Below, piece after piece: positions 39,856 to 61,577 of a stretch of 64,000 nucleotides of DNA. Location of the stretch: positions 13,082,001 through 13,146,000 of the forward strand of contig CP075496.1 in NCBI GenBank assembly GCA_021613535.1. Reading direction: 5' to 3'. Every line of letters begins with the position of its first letter. The first letter of the stretch is position 1. The notes under the pieces are model-generated. The model saw only the letters and a list, made by a program, of their open reading frames with translations, was not told where the DNA came from and did no database searches. The stretch comes from Adineta vaga (lineage: Eukaryota; Animalia; Rotifera). The position numbers were made by a program, and so were the translations under genes.

Positions 39856-42800
39856 CGTAGATCGCATATCATATTCGTATTCTTTCTTTTTCGATTTAGT
39901 TACATACGTAGATATATTTATAAACTTATCTCATGAGTAATAGCAAGTGTTAGAAGTTCCATTAGTAAAAAAAATAAACTTCTTTTTCTTTCTCTTCAGT
40001 CCAATGTTGGCTAATCAAATAAAATACTTGACTTTTTCTTCTTCTTCTACCGATCCCATACAATTACATAGAAATATGTTCATCAAGGGATTTGATGATC
40101 ATACATGTCTTCCAGACACAATAGATGATGAAACCACTAAAATTATTGCTATCTCTTATCATAATTCTTCACCTTTTTGTCTATCTATCTATGTATATAT
40201 CTATCTAATTATAATAGTTTTCGTTTTATTTTATTGGTCTTCGATGCGTTTATTACATAGATATGTATATAAGTAACATAGAAGATAAATCAAATAACAA
40301 TATAGAAAAACATCGAGAAAGAAGATAAAGATTATTCCACTAGCAAATGTTAGTTTCTTTTTCTTGTTGATGCCACTAGTAAAATAAGCGGAAATTGAAT
40401 TTTTTTACTATTAGTTGTTATTGAGGCAAAAAAAACTTAATCATGATGTAATTAGTGGGAATAAGATGTGTCCTGTCTTCGACTCCTATTTGCTTCGAGT
40501 GTCTATTAATAAACAAGCACGTTCCGCCTCTACTATTTCCTTATTCTTCTTTTAATAACACAAATAAATTTATTTAGACATTCTCGTTTTCTATTTTAAA
40601 TTTGTATAGTCGATTGAGGAAAAAAAAACATGACGTGATTTATGTTCATTATGACGAGAAAAAAAAAGAACGCAACCTTCACCTTTTATGACGCTTGAAG
40701 GACAATCCTAACAATTGCTGGTAATGAACGTCATATTGAAGTGAATAAAAAAAAAATAGTGACTTAAAGCGAAAGGGAAACCTATGATACGATAAGGCAC
40801 TCAAAAGGATTATAAAATATTAATACAATTATATTCTATTATTCTCTTTGGTATATTTTCTTTTTCGTATAAAAGTAAAAGAAAAAAAAACTTCGAACAT
40901 TATATTTTGATGAATACGTTAACAATAATAACGTAACTTACTTTTAACGACATTCAGGTGTGAATGTTCGAACGAACAGGAAGGGTAGGCATAGAAAATA
41001 AGTACCAAAAAAAATGAGTTTTACGCGTATTCTTTCAGTTGTCCTTGAAATGTAACGACAAAAAGAGCAAGGAAATCGATGTAAAAAGATAGGATGGTAA
41101 CGGTAGTTAGCTGCTCTCGTTTCTTTCTGCCTATGCTTCGTAAATGGGTATATGTGACAATTTTTTTAAAGAATACCAGTAGAGACATTTGCACAAAAAG
41201 AGAAGCACAAGAGAATAGACCCATAGAGACTTCTTTTTATATATCAGTAGTACTCGGTTTGTCATTAAACATAAATTACTAAATAGGTTATATTTCCAAT
41301 GAAGCAGAAGACTAGCTATAACACTGAGATAATGCATTGTCAACTAAATTCCATATTTATTCACATCACCGTCTTTTATTCTCATCTTGCTAGTTAGAAT
41401 TTTCATCTTATAAAAAAAAAGAAAAGAAATATGATGCGGTTGTTAAAAATTTTATATAAAAGATTGCTCACAAGAAAAAATAAGAAACTCTAAGTATTCA
41501 AGGACTACCTGTCTGCACGTCATCCGATGAAAAGTGTTTTCTATGAAAAAAAAGAGAAAAAGATCTTTTTTTATTCTCATATTTTTTTCTCTTCTCGATG
41601 CATTTTTTTTCTCGCTTCAAATCCTTCTCACTTGTTGATAGGTAGTCTTTTTCTCTTTCCTCATTTTCTTTTTCCGATGCTGCATTCATTAAACACATCT
41701 GCTAAGCAAATGCTCTGCATGCAAACAGACATTGAGAAAACTTCGTAAAAGAACCATTCGGCTCGAACGATAACACATTAGGTTACATAGTATAATTACG
41801 ATCGTAGTGACGAAACTACAGCATAAATAACGTCAGATGAGAGTACTAGTTCAATAGATGAAAGTTATATTCATGTTACTCGAGAAAAAGAAAGAAACTA
41901 CGAGTTCCGGAGGCTGGTTTTAACCATGTTAACAGTAGTATACTTGTTCAGATCAAACTCAACGATAACGAAAAAGCTTTTTTTTTCTCTCTCTAGTTCT
42001 CTTCGAGTTTCCTTTTCTTTTGCTAGTCGCGTCGATTATTATGCATTCAGTAACGAGGAGGAAAAAAAAGAGAATGACTATAAAAGAAAATGGAAACTAG
42101 TCTCTTTTCCGGATAGAACGACTAGTATATATGGATTGAATTTCGGCGCGCGTGTGCGATAGAGTTCAATCATGGTCTATACACGCATACATGCCGATGA
42201 ATACAGTATGTAGTCAAAGAGGAATCTAAGGAAACAGACATGAAGGAAATAACTCTTATTGATTTGCAAATCGAGTTTTTCTTTTTCTTCGGCGTCATCG
42301 TCGTCTTCTTCTTCTTCTTCTTCTCTCACTCTCTTTCTCTCAATTTAATCTCTTCGTTGCTCATTTTCAGCGATAGAAAACATCAAAAAGGAATACGGAA
42401 TAGAATAGTTTCCCAAATTAAAAATACATTGTTATGATTGATCGTCTCTCGTAGATCGCATATTCAATTGTCATGTATGTGTGAGTACGTGCGGTCAGTC
42501 AGTAATTAATCTTCGTTGAAGATAATCGATATTAAGACTATAATGTGATAATCAATGGTTAAAAAGTTCGACTATCCAAATAACAGGAACAAGCAACAAA
42601 AGGAAATTACCTAATAGTCACTAAATATAAATAAGAAGAGAGAAAATGATGTTGTGATCATTTTTCTTTTTATTCTCTTACTTTACATATCGATATAACA
42701 AGCGCGCGCAGTAGAGAGCGAGAGAGGAAAGAAAAGACATTCATCTTTATAAAAGAGTGGAATCAATAGTTGGGTCAAGGAGAGAAGTTATTGGAGATTG

Positions 42801-45800
42801 ATTGTATAGAAAGATATTTCAAATGATTTTCAACGGATTCTCTGTTGCTTCAATGATGATTTCATTATTTTCGTTACTGTTCTCTTCTCTACTTTATACA
42901 ACTTATATGAATATAGTTCAAAGTGATTAATCGTTCAATCCTCAAATGTAAAAAAACACTTCATGTACTTCTAATGCTTGAAGACAAACAGGTACCCGAT
43001 GCAAATCGAAAGAAAAAGACGAACAGAATAGAAGGGAAAAAAAAGAAATTAATTGTCTTGGAACTAGGAAGAATGTTTTGACAAAGTTGTCGCTTATATT
43101 CATTCTCAAGAGTCACATTAGTATATTCACTTTCAAGTGAAACGTACAAGAATTCAATCAAATGTGTAAATTTCATCACACAGTTAACTCAAGTGCACTA
43201 CACATCTGTATTCTGTTCACATGTTGACTAATCTGATGTCATAATCTTCTTATCATCTGTGTCGAAATTCGTGATACTATCTACTTTTCACAAAGGCTTC
43301 TCTAATGTCGGTATTTTGTAAACTAAGAGTTAAAAAAAAGAAAGAACGTATTCGTATTCTCAATGAAATCGTAGAATGAATTATTTTGTTTTGTTTATGA
43401 ACAATTTCGAGGTATCATTTACAACTCATATCTGTTAGTATGTAAACTCAGACGAAGAGAAAAATACAGAATTGCCGTGTACAACAAAGCATATGATTAC
43501 GTGAACTATAAAGGAAAACGAAGATGAATGACATGAGAAAAGAAATGAAATTCATTTCATGTAAAATTACTTTAAAAAGTGTTAACTCTTGAAGTAATTT
43601 GTAGTCTAATTTATATTTTCTACTATTACATCATTCGATGATGGAATTAATTTTGTAATATACATATGTTGTGTCTGTCAATTCTAAGTGACTTGGTAAT
43701 CGATGTGTTCAAACGAGAACACGTCAATGATGAGAATGAGGATTAATTAATCTTTTCTGCAAGATGAGAGATATGGGTTTTTTCTTTGATAAGTTTATCT
43801 TATAGATGTATATATATATATTTATATATACAAACAAGAAAAAGACACTTACAATTTCTTCAATAGTCATCGTTTTGACCGTATTGCATATGCGTCAAGA
43901 GGAGTTGACCTATCTTTCTGTGTGAGTGTCTGTCTCTCTTTCTTTTTTTTTTACTTTCATAGTTACCCATACGTACGTACGTACGCACGTACACACATTC
44001 GTTGTTTGGACGATGTGAGAAAAAGAAAGATCGAATACTATTTCACGACAGATAATAAATAAGATGTCGTCGACACATAGAGCTTTAGAGAAAATGAAAG
44101 AGAAAGAGAAAAGAGAAATCAACACGCTTGTTCTTGTTCTTCTTCGTCATATCGTTACTACAGATTTTTTTCTTTCGTGATCATTGCAACTTTCTGAAGA
44201 GGATGTTTGATCAATAGGGTGTAGACAACAACCAACACCCATCAATAGAATATATAGTAAAGTTAATCAACCAAACAAGACCCTTCACAATGATGTTGAC
44301 CATAACGACGAGAACGCAATCGATGTGTCAATGTTTGATTGTCGTCTATATACCGTACGAAAGAAAAAAAAAGTTGAAATCTAAAGTATGTACAAGAGAA
44401 TATAGTCGAATAAGAAATAATAAAGCAATCAAACGAGAATGAATTACTAATATTGTTGCGACTGCTTGCTTTATTCCAAGGTGAGGACCTTGATGGAATT
44501 ATGATTGACTAGCAAGTTGATCAGGGCAGACATAAACAAAGTTAAGTGTATAGATCACCGAAAAGAAAACGTCAAGATTTGATTTTTTTTACAAAATGAA
44601 TAAAAATCACGATGAAAAAAAAAACGAAATTTTCCTCCAGATATTATTTATTCATGATCTGACTTCGAGCTTGATTAGTTCGATCTTTTTCTTTATATCA
44701 ATTGTGTTTTACTATTTTATTTAATATATTATTCTAATCATAGATAGGAAGAACAGTTTTTTTTCCGTTCATAACAAACCTGTTTCTGCCGATGGAAATA
44801 TGTTATATATTCGACAATTGGCAAGGGAATAAATGGAGAAATGATGAGCTTAATATTCATCTCAAGGTTGCTGCTGTTCTATCACGCTTAAAGCATAATA
44901 ATATTCATGATGATTGATCGACATCGATCGTTTTCTTTTTTGTTGAACAATTATCAACATAAACCTATTACATAACTTAGATACACATAACTCCACCTGT
45001 CTCTCTCTCCCTTCTTTTTTTCGCCGGAGGTCGTAGTAGTAACTGACCTTGTTTGCTTTCATATTTACATATAAGAGGAGACATTATATTATGTTAACCT
45101 TCAACTTACACTTACTTGCTTAGTTCAACACAATTTGGCAATGACATTATTCTCCATATCTCTTTTTTTTATTTCTCTTTCTTTCTCTCTCTTCCTCCTT
45201 TCACTTTTGTTCGTTCCTAGTAAAACGAACGACATAACTATTTAAAAAAATGAGCGCCATGTGTATATATATCGTTATAATGGATCGGACGTCTATTGTT
45301 TAACTACAAACAGTGTCATTGAACCAATAAATATTCATTATTCCGGCAAGTGACATTGACTTGATGCTTCTAATTCCAAAAAAGCTCTATAGACATCTAG
45401 GCACATATGTGTACACGCATGAAGTTGATGGGTTATAGGACGCCGACGCCGACAACTGCTGCTGTTCGTAGTTTAAGAAGATGTGCATATGGAATGATGT
45501 AATGATTCTCGTGATGCTATGCATGTATCATTACCCATATCTAAGGTCGAGCGCGTGCATGTATCCATCATTTTATTATTCTTCGATTAGAGACATATGC
45601 AGATAAAATCTTATCATCCTCGTTTGTAATTCCGTTTATAAACTACCTTGAAAAAGGTCGAATAATAAAATCGATCTTCATATATTTCTTACCATTAACG
45701 ATCATTGATTGATCATATTGAAATAAAAAAAAATTCCCTTATGATACTATCATAAAAATCAAAAGGAATGAAGAAATTTTTTTTTCTACTCTACATTCCC

Positions 45801-46492
45801 TGTGGAAATTAAATACAAACACATACATATTTGACAAAAAAGAAAGATAAAAAAATCAACTTTAGGTATATGTAAAATCATATTTTAAATCTTTTCATTG
45901 AATAAACTTAAATTTATTATCATATGAAATGAAGAAAGAAAACTTTCAAATATCAGTTATATTAAGATTAATGCATATGATTATATCGAGGTTGAAAAAG
46001 TACGAGATTCAATGAAATGAAATTACGAATAGCTTCTAATGCCGTTTTGATTATCTTTCAACAATTGTTTTCTTGACGAGCCTTGTAGACAAACCATACT
46101 GATATCGTTTATATGTAGATAAACTTCCCTTAGACAATGTCATTGAGTGATAAAATACTATATGTGATATGTATACTAGAAATATGTTGAATAACATTCG
46201 TCTACTCCATTTTCAACTTAAGTATTTTATCTACTTTGTTCTCTTTTTCTATAGTTATTATTATCATAAGTTCGAAAGCATGCTCAATTTTCTTTTTTTC
46301 AGATCTACGTCATTCTAATCTTCTTTTTCATTGTCATTACCATGAGCTTTTCATAAAGAATTCTCTCGAGTTTCATAATCAACAAGAAAAAAGATTTATA
46401 CAAAATAGATATATATATATATATATACATACAATAAAAACAAAACTAATGAGATTCTAAAAAAACAAAATTATCATTCGATGAAATACATA

Positions 46493-48034
46493 CTACAAAT
46501 TCATATCACAGTCATTCATTAACAATATTGATTGATCATGTTCGTTAGGAATATTCATTGATACTGAGAAATTATTGTCATCTAATAAAAGATTAGAATA
46601 GGATTTGATTGGTACATAATTCGGTTGTTTCGTTGATGTTGTTGAATCAGATGATGCAAGTGCAAAAAATTGAGAATTCGAAGAAAATGAAGAAAGAAGA
46701 GATTCATCTAGAGAATATATATTTATTTTCTTAATTGAAAAACAAGAATGTCCCTTACCGTTCATGTCAATTGATTCTGTATCAATCGGTACTGTTATAG
46801 TTTTTAAATAGTTCATTAAAACCAATCCACATGTTATAACAACAAATCCAACTAGACACGCAAGAATATCTACAAATGCTAAGAAACGCCATTCACGAAA
46901 AAGTATACCGGATGTAATTAGGACACATGTTGTAAATAGGACATAATAAACAGTTGTTACAATTGGTGTTGAAAATATATCTAATGCTTTATTGAGATAA
47001 ACCATTTGTATAAAAATACAAGCGATAATGGTTATCGCACAGAAAAAAGTTAACCAAATGGAATATGTATGTTTATGTGTATAGAATTCTTTTAATCCTG
47101 TCGCTAAACCTTTGCATGCGGTAACAGTAAATGCGCCCAAAAGTGAACAGATTAAGATATATATAGAAACATATTGTGTGCCCAAACGAGGTGCATAATG
47201 GAAAATTAACAATAAAATAACACCACATGTAAACAATGAAAAAAAAAGAAATTCTAAACGAAATTAATGACCTATACCATGAGTAAGTGTTTTATTATGT
47301 CAACATACCTGCAGAGCCGATTCTTTCTGAAAAATCTAATAAAGAATTTACATCATTATCTTTTGGTGCATGAATAACAAGAATAATCGAGCCAGAAATC
47401 GTAAGAAGACAACCAATCTTACCAAGTGTACTTAAGTTTTCATTCAAAAATCGAACAGCCATAAGAGCACTACACAAATAAATATAAAATAATAAACGAA
47501 CGAAATAAAAATAATATTTTCATAGATAAATATACCTTACTAAGACTGACAGGGCACCAAGTGGAGTAACGACTGATGCTGGAGCAAATCCATATGCTGC
47601 AAAATTGCATGCTTCTCCAATGCCCATTGATATAAGTCCAGCCCACCATTGAATTTCATAGAGATATCCAAAACCACCAGAGCCTATAACCGAAGAAAAC
47701 ATATTTCGTTTGCTAATCGATCACAAGAAATTTTTCTTAACCAACCAGCTCGAACAGATCCAATATGATTAGTTAACTTGAGTAAACCTTTCTTTTTCAA
47801 AATAAAACTTGAACCAATAAATAAACTGGATAAAAGTGCCAGTGAAATACCAATAGTAAATTTATGTGATTTTGCAGAATCAGTTGTTGGCATATTCAAT
47901 AATGTTGATGCTGCTATAACATTCGGTAAGCTATTTGTTCGAGTGAGTAAATCATTTTCTGAAAATGTAAGTGGTTCACTTGTTAAAAAGACCTCGAATT
48001 ATAAAAGAACATTTTTACTCGTTTCATTCTGCAT
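46493..48034 (-). CDS. NIPA2: NIPA-family magnesium transporter (NIPA2/spict-like)
   Basis: [24 protein letters not shown]; [46 protein letters not shown]; [16 protein letters not shown]; [14 protein letters not shown]; start MQNET at 48034 by manual splicing. Confidence 0.92.
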
Positions 48035-48558
48035 GATGTTCTGTGTGTTCTTACATCTAAAACTATAAATATTTTATACATCAGTCTGAAATTGAGTTAC
48101 GAGAAGTCAGAAAAATAAATCGAATTCTCGTTTCTTTTTCGTTCTGTTCTCATATGATATCCAATAGGTAACATGCCAATTGACTCAAAGAAACAATCCA
48201 ATAATGGCGTGATCCTTCGTTTTTTCTTTTTTTTATTTTCTCGTCTATAACATCGAAAAGAAAGAAAAAACAACGTCCAATGTTTGCACTCCATAATCAT
48301 CCCATCACCTGACAGAAAAGAATCTTAAGAATTGATGCAAAATTCAAGAGAGAAACAAAATAAAGTAACAAATGTATAAGCTGGAATAGTTGTTTGTCAT
48401 ATGAAAGAGAAAACAAAACTTTCCTTTTCTATTTATATGTGTGTTCAATAGTATCAAGAATAAAAAAACAACAACCCCAAAGAAAGGAAATGAACAGTAT
48501 CTCAATATGAGATATAGAGGAAAGAGGAAAGAGGAAAGTGGAAAAAAAGCAAAACTGT

Positions 48559-54896: not shown

Positions 54897-57800
54897 TTAT
54901 GTTTGAACATCACCATAGGTACCTTGTTGAGCACGGTAATGTTCCGGAAATGTTAATAATTGAAAATATGAAAACGCATATGCTTTGCAACCTGTATTGG
55001 CAAGTGCATTTTCGATTGATGTTCCATTACATCGAAACTGATTAAGTATCTCTTGTAAATCATGCTTGTCGACATTATGATTATTCAAAAGTAATTGTCC
55101 TTGTTCTAATGTGAAACCCATCGAAGTACGATCTTTAGCACTTTTACAACCAGTTACTCGTACACCATATGCTCGACGACAAATCTAAAATATGATTTCA
55201 CACAAATTAAAAACAAAACAATAACTTTTTCAATTGTTGTCTATTACTTTTTCAGCAAGTGGAAAAATGTGAACATTTTTTGGTTTATTCGATCGGATTG
55301 AATGTTCTAGTTGTTTCAACAAATCAGGAATATCCTCTAAAGAATATATTCACTATTTTCAAAGATGTGGTTCATATCTCATAAATACCAGGCAAATAAT
55401 TCAGACTTTTGTTGATGAATGCTTTGAGTTTATCTAAATTGTTATGATTAAGATCACTTTCGACTTGAGTTGTTGAGAATAGATTCAATCTAGGAAACAA
55501 AATAATTTGAATTATGTATTAATATATTTCATTCGTTTCTATTCTCTTTATAACTTACGTCAATACTCGTGCAGCCAATGCTCGTTCATTGATACCGATA
55601 TTGAATACTACTGGTACAATTCGAATAGATCCACCATCTTTTAATTCTTGTGGTAATTTAGCAAACATAGCAACAGGTAGAGGTATGACAACTTTACAAT
55701 AAAATCTTGTACCAAAAAATCGAGGCTGTAGTAAATCATTATTTGCAGTTGCAGGAACGAAGCGTACATGAACATGTTCTAAAGCATGGATGGCTTCAAC
55801 AGAATCTTCAAGCATACCTAATTCATCACCGTCACATGTCAGAAGATATTCGAAAGACATCAACAATCCTAAAACGAATAGGATAAATTATGCAAGAGAG
55901 AAGAAAAGATGTTTATGTTGATTTTTCAAATAAATTTATGATGGAAAAAGAAATTAAGTCATTAAATATTTCATGCGATGAAAAGGAATGATCGATTTTC
56001 TGTTGGTAAAAACACTGAGAGGTTTTTTCGGTGCTACTGTTTTCAATATAATGACAACACGTGATGGATTCAATTCTGATTGCATAGGAAAACTTAAACA
56101 TATCGCCGGTGGTAAAGTAAGTGGAATAGCTGATCGTGAAGGGTTGATTTTAGGAAGTTTTTTCAAGGTATCACTTGAAAAACTAGTGTCTGTTTTCATC
56201 TTTTTCGATGGTGGTTTGATTGTTGGAGGATTTGTTCGTTTAATTTGGGGTGTCACTGGTGTTGTCGATGGCGGTGGTGGTGGTGGTGGGAGAAGAGGAG
56301 GTAATTTAATGGATGAAAATCGTGATCTTGGTACTTCTTTTACAGTATTTTGATATGATTTTGTTCGTCGATGAGCACGTTTTATTGGTACCACCTGATC
56401 TGGTAGTAAATGATATGTCTTCGGTTTTGCAAGTCGATTGACAGTTTCCATAGAAAATACTGTTATTGGATTGCGAGCACGTGGTCGTGGAGTTGAAGAA
56501 ATTTTCGGGAGAGTTTTCGTCGAAGTCTCTGCCGATAAGTGAATTTTTTGTTTCTTACGATTTTCGAACAATGTTGATGATGCCATTGATTGATGAGTAC
56601 TAGTTGTGATAGTTGTTGGTATCAAAGATAACGTAGATGTATACAATGGCGGAATCGAATCTAAAGAAGTTCTCGATGGAGTGCGAGACAAAAGTGAATT
56701 CGCGTCGTTTGAACAGTAACTAGGTGGTCGATGTTGATATCGACTTTTAACAATTCGTCGATTAAATTCTTCAACACTACCTAACAATGGTAGTCTTTCA
56801 TCTTTTTTCACTATCGATGCGATCAGACTATCATTTGTTTTCTTTTGTTCTCTTTCACTCCGTCTTACATCACGTAATGGATTATCGATATCACTGAAAG
56901 TCTTTTCAAAACTAGATTTAAAACTCGTATGTTGTTGTGACAATTGATCAAAACGATTGAGAAGATTATCAATTGAATGTAGTACAGGAAACATCATTTT
57001 CTTACTATGTATGTTCGTAAGAAATATAGAACGATGAAGTGAAATAAAGTTAAGTATTAACAATCACATAAAAAATATCGATAATAGTTCATTTTCTTTA
57101 TGAAATGTATGAAAAAATAACAATACATTTCAAGTTTTTTTTTCTCTCCTCGTCTACTTTTTGTATACTTACCATTATTAATGTAAAGCTTCCATGCTTG
57201 ATCACTAATTTTAACAGACGATAGAAGAACATATACAGAGAATATAAGACATGTTAACTAGAAAAATAAGAAATCAAAACAATAACAATGAGAGTTATAA
57301 AAAAAATAGGTATGATAATTACCGCTTGAGAAAAAGCAATGTCAAAACGTTCTCGAAATACTTCAGGATATCGTTCAATTTCCATATTTTCTTGAAATAT
57401 ATATCGAATAATATGTTTACATGTATGACGTTCAAGTTCATCGGCAATCAATTTAAGATTATTTAGTTGTGTCTTGCCAAATGTTTGTTCATCTTTGTTC
57501 ATCGATTGTTTTATCTCTTCTGTTAGTTTTCGAGCTTTATCTTGTATCGTTTCCTTCAAAAGAGGAGATTTAAATGATTCAAATATATTTAAAAGCTATG
57601 ATTTATTTTACATACATTCGATTGAGAGACTTCCTCGGTGGGAACTCTCGATATCAACGGGTTGATAATAACTTGTCCAGTAGAATTAGCTATTGTATCT
57701 AGATCTTTAGTTGAATATTCAAGTAAAGAAGAAACCTAACGAAAATAGGAAAATAAAGTGCAGTTTTTTTTAATGATCTTTCGTTATTTAACAAACTTAC

Positions 57801-58823
57801 AGCTTTGACAACTCTTTGTAGAGATAATCTTAATACAGAACGTTCAACATTTGTAGAAGGACTTTCTAGAATATGGGTTAAATGATCCAATGCATCCTCA
57901 ATATCACTATTAAGAATCAAAACATCTTGTAATTTCTCTTGTAAAAAACGTAGACGTTTATTTGACTCAATAATATTCGCCTTCATTCTTCGTAAACCGC
58001 CATGCGAAAAACGTGAATGATGTACAGCAGGTGCACCTAATGTCACTGTATTATAAATTGCCTCTGAAAGATAATTCAATGGAGAAAAACAAACATCAAC
58101 AATATAAATCATTCGTCTGATAAAATACTTTGTGAAGGATCATCACCACTACTAACTAATAATTGTTGAAGATGTAAATTCATTGGAACATGTGCAATTT
58201 CAGGTTTCATACGTTCAATAGAACGACGAAATAGACGTCCTAAATTCATATGCATTGAAGATGCAAATGTGAAAAATTTAAATCATACCATTACATTCAC
58301 TTTCATAAGTTTGAATAGCTCCAATTATATCCGTATAACGTTGAATAAAATCTTTATAAATTCGAATACAATTAAGTCGATGAATTTCTTCTCCACTACT
58401 TAACTATAAATATTTCACTTAAATTCTTATCATAATTAATAAATCAAAATTGAATTACAAACCGTTCCTAATTCTTCCGCAAATCGAATAAATTTTCCTG
58501 CACGTTTTAAATAAAATCGTCTAAAGAATCGAATTCATATACAAAGAAATTTATGTTGTAATATTTTCTTACAAATAACAAACAGGCGTGGAAAAATTTC
58601 CATCATATTCTGACATTAACTGAACGACATTGATCTTTTTAGTTCGATCTTTGGTTCGAAATTCAAAATGTCTTGGTACGAAATTACTTGCAATCTGTTT
58701 CAAGTTAATCTTTTCATTATCAATAAATGATACCATTGATTGAGGAATAACAACAGCTGGATTTGAATCCTCTGGTTTTGTTCCAACTTTTATATCAACT
58801 ACTGTATTGGCCAATGATGCCAT
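54897..58823 (-). CDS. INPP4: Inositol polyphosphate 4-phosphatase (INPP4A/B family)
   Basis: Catalytic CX5R motif VTGCKSAKDRTSMGFTLEQ; HVPMNLHLQQL; YNTVTLGAPAVH; FDIAFSQALT; GLLMSFEYLLTCDGDELGMLED; PVVFNIGINE. Possible extra in-frame upstream exon from ATG 58917. Confidence 0.92.
55954..56997 (-). CDS. Intronless 347-aa basic Pro/Ser/Thr-rich ORF nested in INPP4 intron 55869-57172
   Basis: Uninterrupted frame of more than 1 kb in strongly AT-rich DNA, with coding-like composition; first ATG at 56997; the flanking INPP4 exons join in frame (YINN-G-LLMSF) without it. Confidence 0.75.
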   Translation of the reverse strand: MMFPVLHSIDNLLNRFDQLSQQHTSFKSSFEKTFSDIDNPLRDVRRSEREQKKTNDSLIASIVKKDERLPLLGSVEEFNRRIVKSRYQHRPPSYCSNDANSLLSRTPSRTSLDSIPPLYTSTLSLIPTTITTSTHQSMASSTLFENRKKQKIHLSAETSTKTLPKISSTPRPRARNPITVFSMETVNRLAKPKTYHLLPDQVVPIKRAHRRTKSYQNTVKEVPRSRFSSIKLPPLLPPPPPPPSTTPVTPQIKRTNPPTIKPPSKKMKTDTSFSSDTLKKLPKINPSRSAIPLTLPPAICLSFPMQSELNPSRVVIILKTVAPKKPLSVFTNRKSIIPFHRMKYLMT

Positions 58824-59448
58824 CTGAAATAATCAATCAGATAAGTATATATCACCTAACTGGACATACTTGTCGTTTGATCGATATGGTTTTAAATATA
58901 AGTAAATATTGACGCATATATTTTACATCTAGGCACAATGAAAAACCATAAAGAGATTATCATTTTATGTGTCATATTCTATAAAAAGAATATTTAGTCA
59001 AAACAATGCACTGAGAGTACATGAAAAAAGAACAAACAAACGTACGAGTTGATTCGTCTTGTTTTTTTTCGTATCTTATGCACTAATATGATGTTTTTAA
59101 GAAAGTTTATTTCTTTTGAAAAAACATAAAAATAAAGAGAATCAACGACTACAAACAACAACAACAACAGTAATAATAAACAAAACACGCAAAGAAGAAA
59201 ACAATAAATAATCCACCGTCGAGTATTTTTCTATTCTTTATGCGTTCGTTTCTTTTCTTTTTACCTTTTCTCAACAAAAATTATAGAAATATGATCATAA
59301 TATATCAATGCTTGGCTTCTTTTGTTTTATCTCGCATATAAATAAGAACGAAAAAAGAGAAACAAAACAAATAAAAATAAAACACGTTTGTTTTTTGTTT
59401 TCATACAAACACATTCACACACGCACACATATAAATATAAGAATATAT

Positions 59449-60687: not shown

Positions 60688-61064
60688 TTTTAAATCTAAG
60701 ATAATGATGGAAAAAGCTATAATAATAATTAAAATAAAAACTACGATGATACATGGATAGAAGTTCAAGATTTTACCAACGAACACGCATACCTTTTTTC
60801 CATAACCAATCATATGTTGATATCCATCTGGGTCGGATTTTTTTCTCGGAAAAAAAACTAAAACTATCGCTTGAAAATCAAGAAATTGTTTCTTTAAGAA
60901 TATTTCTTTCTTCCAATCGAATTTATTACCGACATCTTTTTCTCTTCTCTTTGATTAACAAAACAACATGGACAATGGCAAATGCTCTTTCTATTGGTTC
61001 ATTAAGATATATAACCCAGTAATCGGTCGTTGATCAATTACTTGCTCAATCAAAATATCGAAAA
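60688..61064. promoter_or_regulatory. Probable bidirectional promoter SSR1/orphan gene
   Basis: Divergent start codons 377 bp apart. Confidence 0.4.
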
Positions 61065-61577
61065 ATGTCGACTCTTTGTCGTTTTGTATTACCAACAGCG
61101 TTATCATCAATTGAAGAAGCATGTGTAGCCGAATTTAATGAATTTAAAAAACGTAAGAAGGAGATAGCACAAAATAAATCGTCAGCAAAACGTTTAACAA
61201 ATACAGCGGGAGGAATAACAACAAATCTAACAAGTTCGAATGATTCATCCCGTCATTCAAAAGATTCCATACGAAATCCTGAACAAGCAAAAGAAGCAGC
61301 AAAAAAACTTGTTCAAAGTGGTGCTATTAAAGTTCAAGCACAAGGTAAAGATCAAGGTTTTAAACGTGCATCATCGAATTCAGGTCAAGAACGTCTTATT
61401 AAAAAAATTGGTTTAACACCAAATACATCATCATCATCACCATCAACAGTGAATCAATCGAATCCATTTCAATCGATTTCATTTGTTAGTCCAAGTTCGA
61501 CACCTAAATTTGTACATACGAATTCTCATGAAAACAAACGAAATGTTGTTAATTATGATGATACAGACACTTATTAA
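61065..61577 (+). CDS. Uncharacterised intronless 170-aa basic protein
   Basis: AAAAATG start context, host-like codon usage, NLS-like FKKRKKE, acidic tail VVNYDDTDTY. Confidence 0.7.
   Translation: MSTLCRFVLPTALSSIEEACVAEFNEFKKRKKEIAQNKSSAKRLTNTAGGITTNLTSSNDSSRHSKDSIRNPEQAKEAAKKLVQSGAIKVQAQGKDQGFKRASSNSGQERLIKKIGLTPNTSSSSPSTVNQSNPFQSISFVSPSSTPKFVHTNSHENKRNVVNYDDTDTY

What the first reader, a model, noticed from the sequence alone, without database searches (positions are those of the whole stretch)
55869..57172. Same-strand intronless gene nested inside an INPP4 intron
Seen: the INPP4 exon ending ...YINN G|gtaagt (57173) joins ttttag|GA TTG (55868) to give a contiguous, family-conserved segment, so the 1304-nt interval is an intron, about 20x the local norm. 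It is almost filled by a 347-codon ORF on the same strand. That ORF is preceded by a pyrimidine tract and AG (57006-57005) and followed by only ~85 nt containing CATAAA hexamers. Established: nested genes are more commonly antisense to the host. Inference: one pre-mRNA may be processed into either INPP4 or this protein, by intronic polyadenylation plus SL trans-splicing or by an internal promoter, making the two outputs competitive.
Basis: partly seen in the sequence, partly recalled or inferred. Interest (0 to 1): 0.8.

Follow-up and report, generated by a model that had tools for sequence, protein, structure and literature searches.

The report
Orphan gene nested in INPP4 intron
In bdelloid rotifers a small rotifer-only gene of unknown function sits, on the same strand, inside one oversized intron of the lipid-phosphatase gene INPP4; the layout is real and old, but nested genes are a known kind of arrangement and how the two mRNAs are made could not be tested.

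Summary
Window 55869-57172 (minus strand) is a 1304-nt GT-AG intron in a gene whose other introns are about 41-70 nt. A 347-codon intronless ORF (56997-55954) nearly fills it.

The host is an INPP4 family member. Its exons map in order onto a profile of 32 full-length INPP4 proteins. The 29 profile positions between the flanking exons are exactly filled by the 28-aa exon plus the split Gly codon, and the last exon carries CKSAKDRT.

The ORF is a real gene. Intact homologues occur only in bdelloid rotifers, with in-frame indels only and dN/dS 0.27-0.6 against A. vaga. It matches no Pfam family, and only one paralogue exists in the genome. The protein is mostly disordered.

The nested layout and both splice sites are conserved in Adineta, Rotaria and several environmental bdelloid contigs. 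An old paralogue (contig 1, ohnologous region) lies free beside TRAP-alpha with no INPP4 remnants.

I therefore favour an internal promoter over spliced-leader processing. No RNA data could be obtained, so this is untested.

The scan has already noted several other same-strand nested genes in this genome. Verdict: a new member of a known kind, of modest interest.

The parts
54897..58823 (-). Coding span of the host INPP4-like gene, from ATG 58823 to stop 54899-54897. Further 5' exons between 59449 and 58823 are not excluded.
   Evidence: Exon blocks are conserved with A. ricciae, Rotaria and L016. They map collinearly onto an INPP4 profile. The profile members are named INPP4A/B-like by their sources.
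57323..57559 (-). Host exon U7 (79 aa), second exon upstream of the long intron.
   Evidence: Matches INPP4 profile positions 652-727, E 1.2e-4, ending at its last residue. It is 64-82% identical in other bdelloids.
57173..57257 (-). Host exon U8 (28 codons plus the first base of a split Gly codon). It ends YINN G, then the donor gtaagt.
   Evidence: It is 86-96% identical in metagenome loci. With the split Gly codon it fills the 29 profile positions 728-756 exactly. On its own it does not score against the profile.
55869..57172 (-). Long host intron of 1304 nt, phase 1, GT-AG.
   Evidence: Donor G|GTRAGT is conserved in 6 lineages and acceptor YAG|GA in 5. It is about 20 times the length of the host's other introns.
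56998..57172 (-). 175-nt spacer between the host donor and the nested ATG. It holds conserved blocks at about 57127-57121 (TGTATTG), 57101-57077, 57075-57054 (TTTTTTATGTGATTGTTAATAC) and 57020-57011 (TTACGAACAT). This is the candidate promoter and 5' UTR of the nested gene.
   Evidence: Alignments of nested and free copies. The second block reads TTAATTTGATCGTTAACAT in nested L012 and L019, and TTAATTCGATCGTTAACAT in free L025.
55954..56997 (-). Nested intronless gene of 347 codons plus TAA. It encodes a bdelloid-restricted, mostly disordered, basic Ser/Thr/Pro-rich protein.
55871..55953 (-). 3' spacer of the nested gene, with CATAAA at 55940-55935 and 55917-55912, followed by the host's pyrimidine tract.
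   Evidence: ATCATAAAT is conserved at the same place in A. ricciae and as TTCATAAAT in Rotaria. A. steineri has ATCAAAAAT, and L016 has AATAAA further on.
55559..55868 (-). Host exon D1, the first exon after the long intron.
   Evidence: Matches the IP4P domain of P-Rex2 (PDB 9zq7_A residues 1323-1414, E 8e-5) and INPP4 profile positions 757-854 (E 2e-34).
55125..55148 (-). CKSAKDRT, the Cys-x5-Arg catalytic motif of the host, in its last exon (about 55184-54897).
   Evidence: Sequence. The exon matches INPP4 profile positions 927-1021, E 2e-44.

Best explanation
This is a conserved host/nested gene pair. A single INPP4-type phosphoinositide 4-phosphatase gene is spliced across a 1304-nt intron. 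That intron carries, on the same strand, a complete intronless gene for a bdelloid-only, largely disordered protein. The pair predates the split of Adineta and Rotaria, and probably the old bdelloid genome duplication. In the duplicated region (contig 1) the INPP4 copy vanished while the small gene stayed next to TRAP-alpha. I infer that the small gene is its own transcription unit. Its compact promoter would lie in the 175 nt after the host donor, and its poly(A) signal in the about 85 nt before the host acceptor. Host polymerases would have to read through both signals and splice the whole unit out. Shown here: the anatomy, the host's identity, the conservation, the coding constraint and the shared upstream blocks. 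Inferred only: the promoter, the poly(A) site and any interference between the two genes. The protein's function is unknown. My guess is a nuclear or cytoskeleton-bound scaffold that acts through short linear motifs, based only on its basic, disordered make-up and its short conserved motifs. The confidence given is for the whole statement; for the nesting alone it is about 0.9.
For: Host identity and continuity:
- Exon D1 hits the P-Rex2 IP4P domain.
- D1 retrieved 161 proteins, whose full-length members are named INPP4A/B-like.
- A profile of 32 of them places the exons in order, and the 29-position gap is filled exactly by exon U8 plus the split codon.
- CKSAKDRT is present.

Splice sites:
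- The donor is conserved in 6 lineages and the acceptor in 5, with the same phase.
- Sequence after the donor shows indels that are not multiples of three and stops at varying positions, so read-through is not coding.

The ORF is a gene:
- It is 347 aa against a maximum of 165 in simulations.
- Twelve protein homologues were found, all named ones from bdelloids.
- Blocks are conserved and indels are in frame.
- dN/dS is 0.27 against A. ricciae and 0.44 against the contig-1 paralogue.

Layout:
- The nested layout occurs in A. ricciae L008, Rotaria Silwood2 L014, L016, L012, L013 and L018-L024.
- The free layout occurs in contig 1, L011, L017 and L025-L032.
- The free copies of A. vaga and Rotaria form a clade with 100/98 support.

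Own promoter:
- Upstream blocks are shared by nested and free copies.
- The 11-mer tested from one of these blocks, GAAAATCAAAC, is not enriched in the window: 8 matches against 6.3 expected.
Against: No transcript, cap, spliced-leader or poly(A) evidence was obtained, so neither the promoter nor splicing of the host across the unit is shown. Every contig recovered is genomic.

The shared upstream blocks could instead be a 5' UTR element or an RNA-processing element. In both layouts the gene lies downstream of another same-strand gene, so co-transcription is not excluded.

Exon U8 alone does not score against the INPP4 profile. Its placement rests on length and position.

Some pairwise dN/dS values among other species are near 1 (0.92-1.1). 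This probably reflects underestimated dS in AT-rich sequence, but constraint is clearly weak outside the conserved blocks.

Public gene models in A. ricciae and Rotaria split the host into separate genes.
Confidence: 0.6

Rival explanations
1. Operon-like processing. The nested gene has no promoter of its own. Its mRNA is cut out of the INPP4 pre-mRNA (or, in the free copies, the TRAP-alpha pre-mRNA) by 3' end formation and spliced-leader trans-splicing. Each primary transcript then yields either INPP4 or the small protein.
For: The gene lies on the same strand with tight spacing: 175 nt upstream and about 85 nt downstream. In A. vaga a pyrimidine tract and AG lie just before the ATG. In both layouts the gene follows another same-strand gene. 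Unchecked notes from other follow-ups of this scan report spliced leaders on other nested genes of this genome.
Against: An AG between the T-rich tract and the ATG is missing in 5 of 10 lineages. The spacing to the upstream gene in the free copies ranges from 250 nt to 1.6 kb. No spliced-leader-bearing contig was found for this gene.
Confidence: 0.2
2. Split host. The old INPP4 gene has broken into two independent genes, an N-terminal part ending shortly after 57173 and a 261-aa catalytic part starting at the Met near 55860. The ORF is then simply a gene between two genes.
For: Public gene models call three separate genes in A. ricciae and Rotaria. Four of five species have ATG as the first full codon of exon D1.
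Against: Donor and acceptor are conserved with matching phase in all lineages examined. That first full codon is TTG in A. vaga, and related INPP4s have Leu at the equivalent position, so the Met looks like an ordinary internal residue. The read-through tail after the donor varies in length and frame. The two-sided fit to the INPP4 profile is exact. The one apparent case lacking upstream exons (A. steineri) is bounded by assembly gaps.
Confidence: 0.07
3. The ORF is not a functional gene: a chance ORF, a decaying insertion or a mobile element.
For: It has no Pfam match and no relatives outside bdelloids. The predicted structure is poor, with mean pLDDT 51.
Against: The frame is intact in more than 15 loci from divergent bdelloids, with only in-frame indels. 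dN/dS is below 1 against A. vaga. The genome holds two copies only, in syntenic positions. The ORF is far longer than chance allows.
Confidence: 0.02

Closest known systems
Mammalian host/nested pairs with a same-orientation intronless nested gene, such as H13/Mcts2 (PMC13309782; survey in PMC11694760)
   Same: An intronless protein-coding gene lies inside an intron of a host on the same strand and has its own poly(A) signal, which the host must read through. In H13/Mcts2, transcription of the nested gene drives premature termination of the host.
   Different: Here the intron is only 1.3 kb and is almost filled, in a genome whose normal introns are about 40-70 nt. The nested gene is a lineage-restricted orphan, not a retrocopy of a known gene. 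No imprinting or methylation control is known. Interference between the two genes is only inferred.
Nested genes in introns of Drosophila and C. elegans (established knowledge; most are antisense to the host)
   Same: A complete gene sits inside a host intron and the pair is kept over long evolutionary time.
   Different: The orientation here is the same-strand minority. A duplicated region in which the host was lost and the nested gene kept shows directly that the nested gene does not need this host.
Spliced-leader operons of nematodes and tunicates (for example PMC1657053, PMC7668243)
   Same: Same-strand genes are separated by very short spacers, in a phylum that has spliced-leader trans-splicing.
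   Different: The downstream gene lies inside an intron, not after the 3' end of the upstream gene. A conserved acceptor before the ATG was tested here and not found. No spliced-leader evidence exists for this gene.
INPP4A/INPP4B and the IP4P domain of P-Rex1/2 (the host's family)
   Same: The host is collinear with these proteins from about profile position 329 to the C terminus and has the CKSAKDRT catalytic motif.
   Different: No counterpart of the N-terminal C2 region (about 300 profile positions) was found in the exons identified. Public bdelloid annotations split the gene.

Membership tests
Host/nested gene pair (same-strand intronic nested gene) | The nested coding sequence lies wholly inside one intron of a single host gene. 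| tested here: met
   The exons on the two sides map to INPP4 profile positions 652-727 and 757-854, and the 29-position gap is filled exactly by the 28-aa exon plus the split codon. GT and AG sites and their phase are conserved.
Host/nested gene pair (same-strand intronic nested gene) | The nested unit is a functional gene in its own right. | tested here: met
   Intact homologues occur across bdelloids, and dN/dS is 0.27-0.6 against A. vaga. A free paralogue is kept without the host.
Host/nested gene pair (same-strand intronic nested gene) | Both genes are transcribed and the host mRNA is spliced across the nested gene. | not testable with these tools
   All recovered contigs are genomic, with introns present. 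No spliced bdelloid INPP4 protein is in the databases searched.
INPP4 phosphoinositide 4-phosphatase family (host) | Cys-x5-Arg catalytic motif CKSAKDRT in the C-terminal domain. | tested here: met
   Window 55148-55125. The exon matches profile positions 927-1021, E 2e-44.
INPP4 phosphoinositide 4-phosphatase family (host) | Collinear similarity to INPP4A/B along the non-catalytic region. | tested here: met
   Seven exons hit the profile in order, with E values from 1e-4 to 2e-44 (one at 0.016). The profile members are named INPP4A/B-like.
INPP4 phosphoinositide 4-phosphatase family (host) | N-terminal C2 domain. | tested here: inconclusive
   The first identified exon starts at about profile position 329. 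Conserved blocks at window 59214-59110 and 58952-58863 were not resolved into exons.
Spliced-leader-resolved downstream cistron | A conserved 3' splice acceptor (pyrimidine tract plus AG) shortly upstream of the start codon. | tested here: not met
   An AG is present in A. vaga at 57006-57005, but absent from the last 50 nt or so in L012, Rotaria Silwood2, Rotaria Silwood1 (free), L018 and L019.
Spliced-leader-resolved downstream cistron | cDNA carrying the spliced leader at its 5' end. | not testable with these tools
   No RNA-derived contig of this gene was found.
Transposon or retrocopy | Transposon protein domains, many copies, or a parent gene elsewhere. | tested here: not met
   No Pfam family. 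The genome holds two copies only, both in syntenic positions. There are no relatives outside this small family.

The most novel reading that the evidence does not exclude
The pair is one instance of a genome-wide bdelloid habit of packing whole genes into same-strand introns. Here each INPP4 primary transcript would be resolved either into INPP4 mRNA, by splicing out the unit, or into the orphan's mRNA, by cleavage at the intronic poly(A) site with or without trans-splicing. The output of a phosphoinositide phosphatase and of a rotifer-only protein would then be reciprocally coupled.
Probability: 0.15. Interest if true: 0.6.

Novelty: new member of a known kind. Interest (0 to 1): 0.3.

Why it matters
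Three points make it useful.

- It is a clean natural experiment. After an old duplication, one region kept host plus nested gene and the other kept only the nested gene, with the same upstream sequence blocks. This argues that a same-strand nested gene can be autonomous.
- It corrects annotation. Public bdelloid gene sets cut this INPP4 into pieces. In A. ricciae there is a 768-aa TRAP-alpha/INPP4 N-part fusion and a 261-aa catalytic piece. In Rotaria the pieces are 439 aa and 237 aa. Surveys of phosphoinositide signalling genes in rotifers would therefore miscount it.
- Together with other cases noted by this scan, it points to a possibly general feature of bdelloid genomes that could be tested with existing RNA-seq.

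Taken alone, it is an ordinary example of a known arrangement.

Tried and rejected
Function of the nested protein:
- Pfam gave nothing at E up to 1.
- The word-index protein search found only bdelloid proteins, with the single sequence and with a 9-sequence profile.
- The ESM Atlas gave no usable hit; the best score was 0.75.
- The AlphaFold2 model had mean pLDDT 51 and pTM 0.16, with only N-terminal helices. I therefore ran no fold search, because a low-confidence model gives meaningless matches.

RNA evidence:
- The exact-protein look-up of the A. vaga ORF found nothing.
- The Logan and ENA contigs for P0002 and P0003 turned out to be genomic.
- P0008 and P0160, which carry extra residues before exon D1, are read-throughs of the intron and not spliced products.
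- All 15 metagenome loci are genomic.

Other checks:
- The upstream host exons did not hit PDB chains individually. A family profile was needed to place them.
- A search for INPP4 exon relics in the free loci found nothing above noise.
- A. steineri seemed to lack the upstream host exons and to have a tandem duplicate of the ORF. Both features are bounded by runs of N and were set aside as assembly artefacts.
- The apparent in-frame conservation past the donor in tblastx is a purine-rich, low-complexity stretch with frame-breaking indels.
- An 8-mer sharing test on the upstream regions was swamped by T runs.

The joined host protein was never assembled, searched or folded.

Full report
**What is in the sequence**

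On the minus strand an exon ends ...Y I N N G at 57173 and is followed by gtaagt. The next coding block starts at 55868 after ttttag. The 1304 nt between them hold one long ORF: ATG at 56997-56995, TAA at 55956-55954, 347 codons.

The other ten gaps between host coding blocks are roughly 41-70 nt, so this intron is about twenty times the local norm. An ORF of 347 codons is far beyond chance for this composition. The maximum was 165 in 2000 Markov simulations and 146 in 2000 shuffles.

**Where the window comes from**

The assembly has 100.8 Mb in 6 contigs, and the window lies on contig 4. GC is about 30% and introns are very short. The nearest relatives of every gene examined are from Adineta ricciae, A. 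steineri and Rotaria.

This fits the chromosome-level assembly of the bdelloid rotifer Adineta vaga. That assembly has six chromosomes, with pairs 1-3 homoeologous to three other pairs (PMC8494291). The species name is my inference and not a tool result.

**The host is one INPP4 gene**

- Exon D1 (55868-55559) matches the inositol-polyphosphate-4-phosphatase-like domain of P-Rex2 (PDB 9zq7_A, residues 1323-1414, E 8e-5).
- The last exon carries CKSAKDRT at 55148-55125.
- An exhaustive search with D1 found 161 proteins. The full-length ones looked up are named INPP4A-like or INPP4B-like by their sources: Tubulanus, Saccoglossus, salmon and other fishes.

I built a profile from 32 full-length hits and scored each window exon separately. 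The exons fall in order:

| Exon | Profile positions | E-value |
|---|---|---|
| U1 | 329-376 | 1e-4 |
| U4 | 431-461 | 1.1e-7 |
| U5 | 466-529 | 3.4e-12 |
| U7 | 652-727 | 1.2e-4 |
| D1 | 757-854 | 1.8e-34 |
| D2 | 856-885 | 0.016 |
| D4 | 927-1021 | 2.1e-44 |

U7 ends at its last residue on position 727, and D1 starts at its first residue on position 757. The 29 positions between them equal the 28 codons of exon U8 (57257-57174) plus the split Gly codon. U8 is too short to score alone, so its placement rests on this fit. The joined protein was never built, searched or folded.

**The splice sites are kept**

The donor AAT AAT G|GTRAGT is conserved in A. vaga, A. ricciae, two environmental Adineta-like contigs (L012, L013), Rotaria sp. 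Silwood2 (L014) and another environmental bdelloid (L016). The acceptor YAG|GA, in the same phase, is conserved in A. vaga, A. ricciae, A. steineri, Rotaria and L016.

Past the donor the sequences differ by indels that are not multiples of three, and stops fall at different distances. The upstream part therefore does not simply read on to a conserved stop.

This argues against a host broken into two genes, even though public gene models cut it that way:

- In A. ricciae: a 768-aa product carrying TRAP-alpha and spanning the upstream INPP4 exons, a 340-aa ORF and a 261-aa catalytic piece.
- In Rotaria: products of 439, 337 and 237 aa.

**The ORF is a gene, and a rotifer-only one**

- The single-sequence search found five proteins: three from A. 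ricciae, A. steineri and Rotaria, and two unnamed ones from sequencing-run assemblies.
- A 9-sequence profile added only five more unnamed environmental proteins.
- Fifteen more loci came from metagenomes.
- All are open, and the protein alignments show only codon-sized gaps.

The conserved blocks include:

- an N-terminal helical stretch, M-IPVLRSID-LLNRFDELS...NPLRDV
- EDFNRRIIKSR..RPPSY
- ITTF(S/T)METVNRLSKPKTYH
- IKRT...IK...KKLK
- P.IC.FPMQ.EL

Nei-Gojobori dN/dS is 0.27 against A. ricciae and 0.43-0.63 against the others. Some pairs not involving A. vaga come close to 1. I attribute that to underestimated dS in AT-rich genes, but constraint between the blocks is clearly weak.

There is no Pfam family and no Atlas look-alike. 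The AlphaFold2 model is poor: mean pLDDT 51, with helices at 4-33, 48-66 and 75-85 and the rest disordered. The genome holds just one other copy, so it is not a mobile element.

**The layout is old, and there is a natural control**

The whole order is collinear in A. ricciae (L008), Rotaria sp. Silwood2 (L014, no gaps) and L016. That order is proteasome-alpha, a small minus-strand gene, TRAP-alpha, INPP4 5' exons, the ORF, then INPP4 3' exons. Partial contigs L012, L013 and L018-L024 show host exons on whichever side they reach.

The second A. vaga copy lies on contig 1 at 38% identity, open for 280 aa. Its region is collinear with the window for TRAP-alpha and proteasome-alpha. However, no INPP4 exon lies on either side, and only about 440 bp separate it from the TRAP-alpha block. 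The same free layout is seen in Rotaria sp. Silwood1 (L011), L017 and L025-L032.

In a maximum-likelihood tree the free copies of A. vaga and Rotaria group together with 100/98 support. The two paralogues therefore separated before Adineta and Rotaria did, which fits the old bdelloid tetraploidy. No relics of INPP4 exons remain in the free loci.

The simplest history is that the nested pair existed before the duplication and that one region later lost the host but kept the guest. That order of events is an inference.

**How the small gene is probably expressed**

The spacer from the host donor to the nested ATG is 175-210 nt in all nested loci. It contains several conserved blocks. The same blocks occur upstream of the free copies. 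For example:

- TTAATTTGATCGTTAACAT in nested L012 and L019 against TTAATTCGATCGTTAACAT in free L025
- GAAAATCAAAC in free A. vaga and free Rotaria against AAAAATCAAAC in nested Rotaria

The proteins of these paralogues are only about 40% identical, so these blocks are under their own constraint. The one 11-mer tested from them, GAAAATCAAAC, is not enriched in the window: 8 matches against 6.3 expected.

By contrast, an AG between the T-rich tract and the ATG is missing in five of the ten lineages compared.

I read this as a compact promoter and 5' UTR belonging to the small gene. A poly(A) signal would follow just after the stop: ATCATAAAT is conserved in A. vaga and A. ricciae, and Rotaria has TTCATAAAT at the same place. 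The host would then have to transcribe through both and remove them with the intron. Interference of the kind shown for mouse H13/Mcts2 (PMC13309782) is plausible but untested here.

The main rival is spliced-leader processing of a longer precursor. It stays open because in both layouts the gene follows another same-strand gene, and because I found no RNA-derived sequence at all.

**Context from this scan**

Notes by other follow-up agents list several other same-strand genes that nearly fill introns in this same genome: chitinase in LRRK, GT15 in GT14, MAK16 in COA1, SNRNP35 in a CYTH gene, an EXTL3-like gene in CLUH and RNASEH2B. For two genes of one cluster they report the rotifer spliced leader on RNA contigs. 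I did not check those notes. They made me treat this case as one of a series, and made me keep the trans-splicing rival at about one in five. The paper library holds nothing specific on nested genes in rotifers.

**Verdict**

It is a new member of a known kind, the host/nested gene pair. Its value lies in the host-less paralogue as a control and in correcting the split INPP4 annotation in bdelloids.

Noticed in passing
L005 = G000:C4:13160385-13163465 (about 14-17 kb beyond the right end of the window): A partial duplicate of the host's 3' end lies here. Window 55640-54796, including the catalytic exon, is copied at 90% nt identity over 850 bp. Next to it is a 98.4% copy of window 60938-61383, part of the small minus-strand gene between proteasome-alpha and TRAP-alpha. 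It looks like a recent segmental duplication or rearranged fragment.
   Followed up: partly
L008 4244-10052 (A. ricciae); L014 3217-8986 (Rotaria sp. Silwood2): Public gene models split the INPP4 host. In A. ricciae they give a 768-aa product carrying TRAP-alpha and spanning the upstream INPP4 exons, plus a 261-aa catalytic piece. In Rotaria they give 439-aa and 237-aa pieces. No full-length bdelloid INPP4 protein appeared in the exhaustive protein search.
   Followed up: partly
L010 7940-10120 (A. steineri): The apparent tandem duplicate of the nested gene, and its odd upstream neighbour, are bounded by N runs and repeat the same flanks. This is most likely two haplotypes scaffolded in series.
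   Followed up: partly
L014 4391-6037 (Rotaria sp. Silwood2): The Rotaria host has a second long gap of about 1.6 kb between the counterparts of window 57762 and 57750. It holds no ORF of 70 aa or more, and its content is unknown.
   Followed up: partly
window 40000-48500 versus G000:C1:1680500-1687900: This block is homologous to the contig-1 region but inverted relative to the collinear TRAP-alpha/proteasome block. An inversion has therefore occurred between the two ohnologous regions.
   Followed up: no
window 58863-59214: Two blocks, 59214-59110 and 58952-58863, lie between the TRAP-alpha stop (59449) and the host ATG at 58823. In tblastx they are 57-77% identical with A. ricciae. They may be further 5' exons or regulatory sequence of the host, which otherwise lacks the N-terminal part of INPP4.
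   Followed up: no
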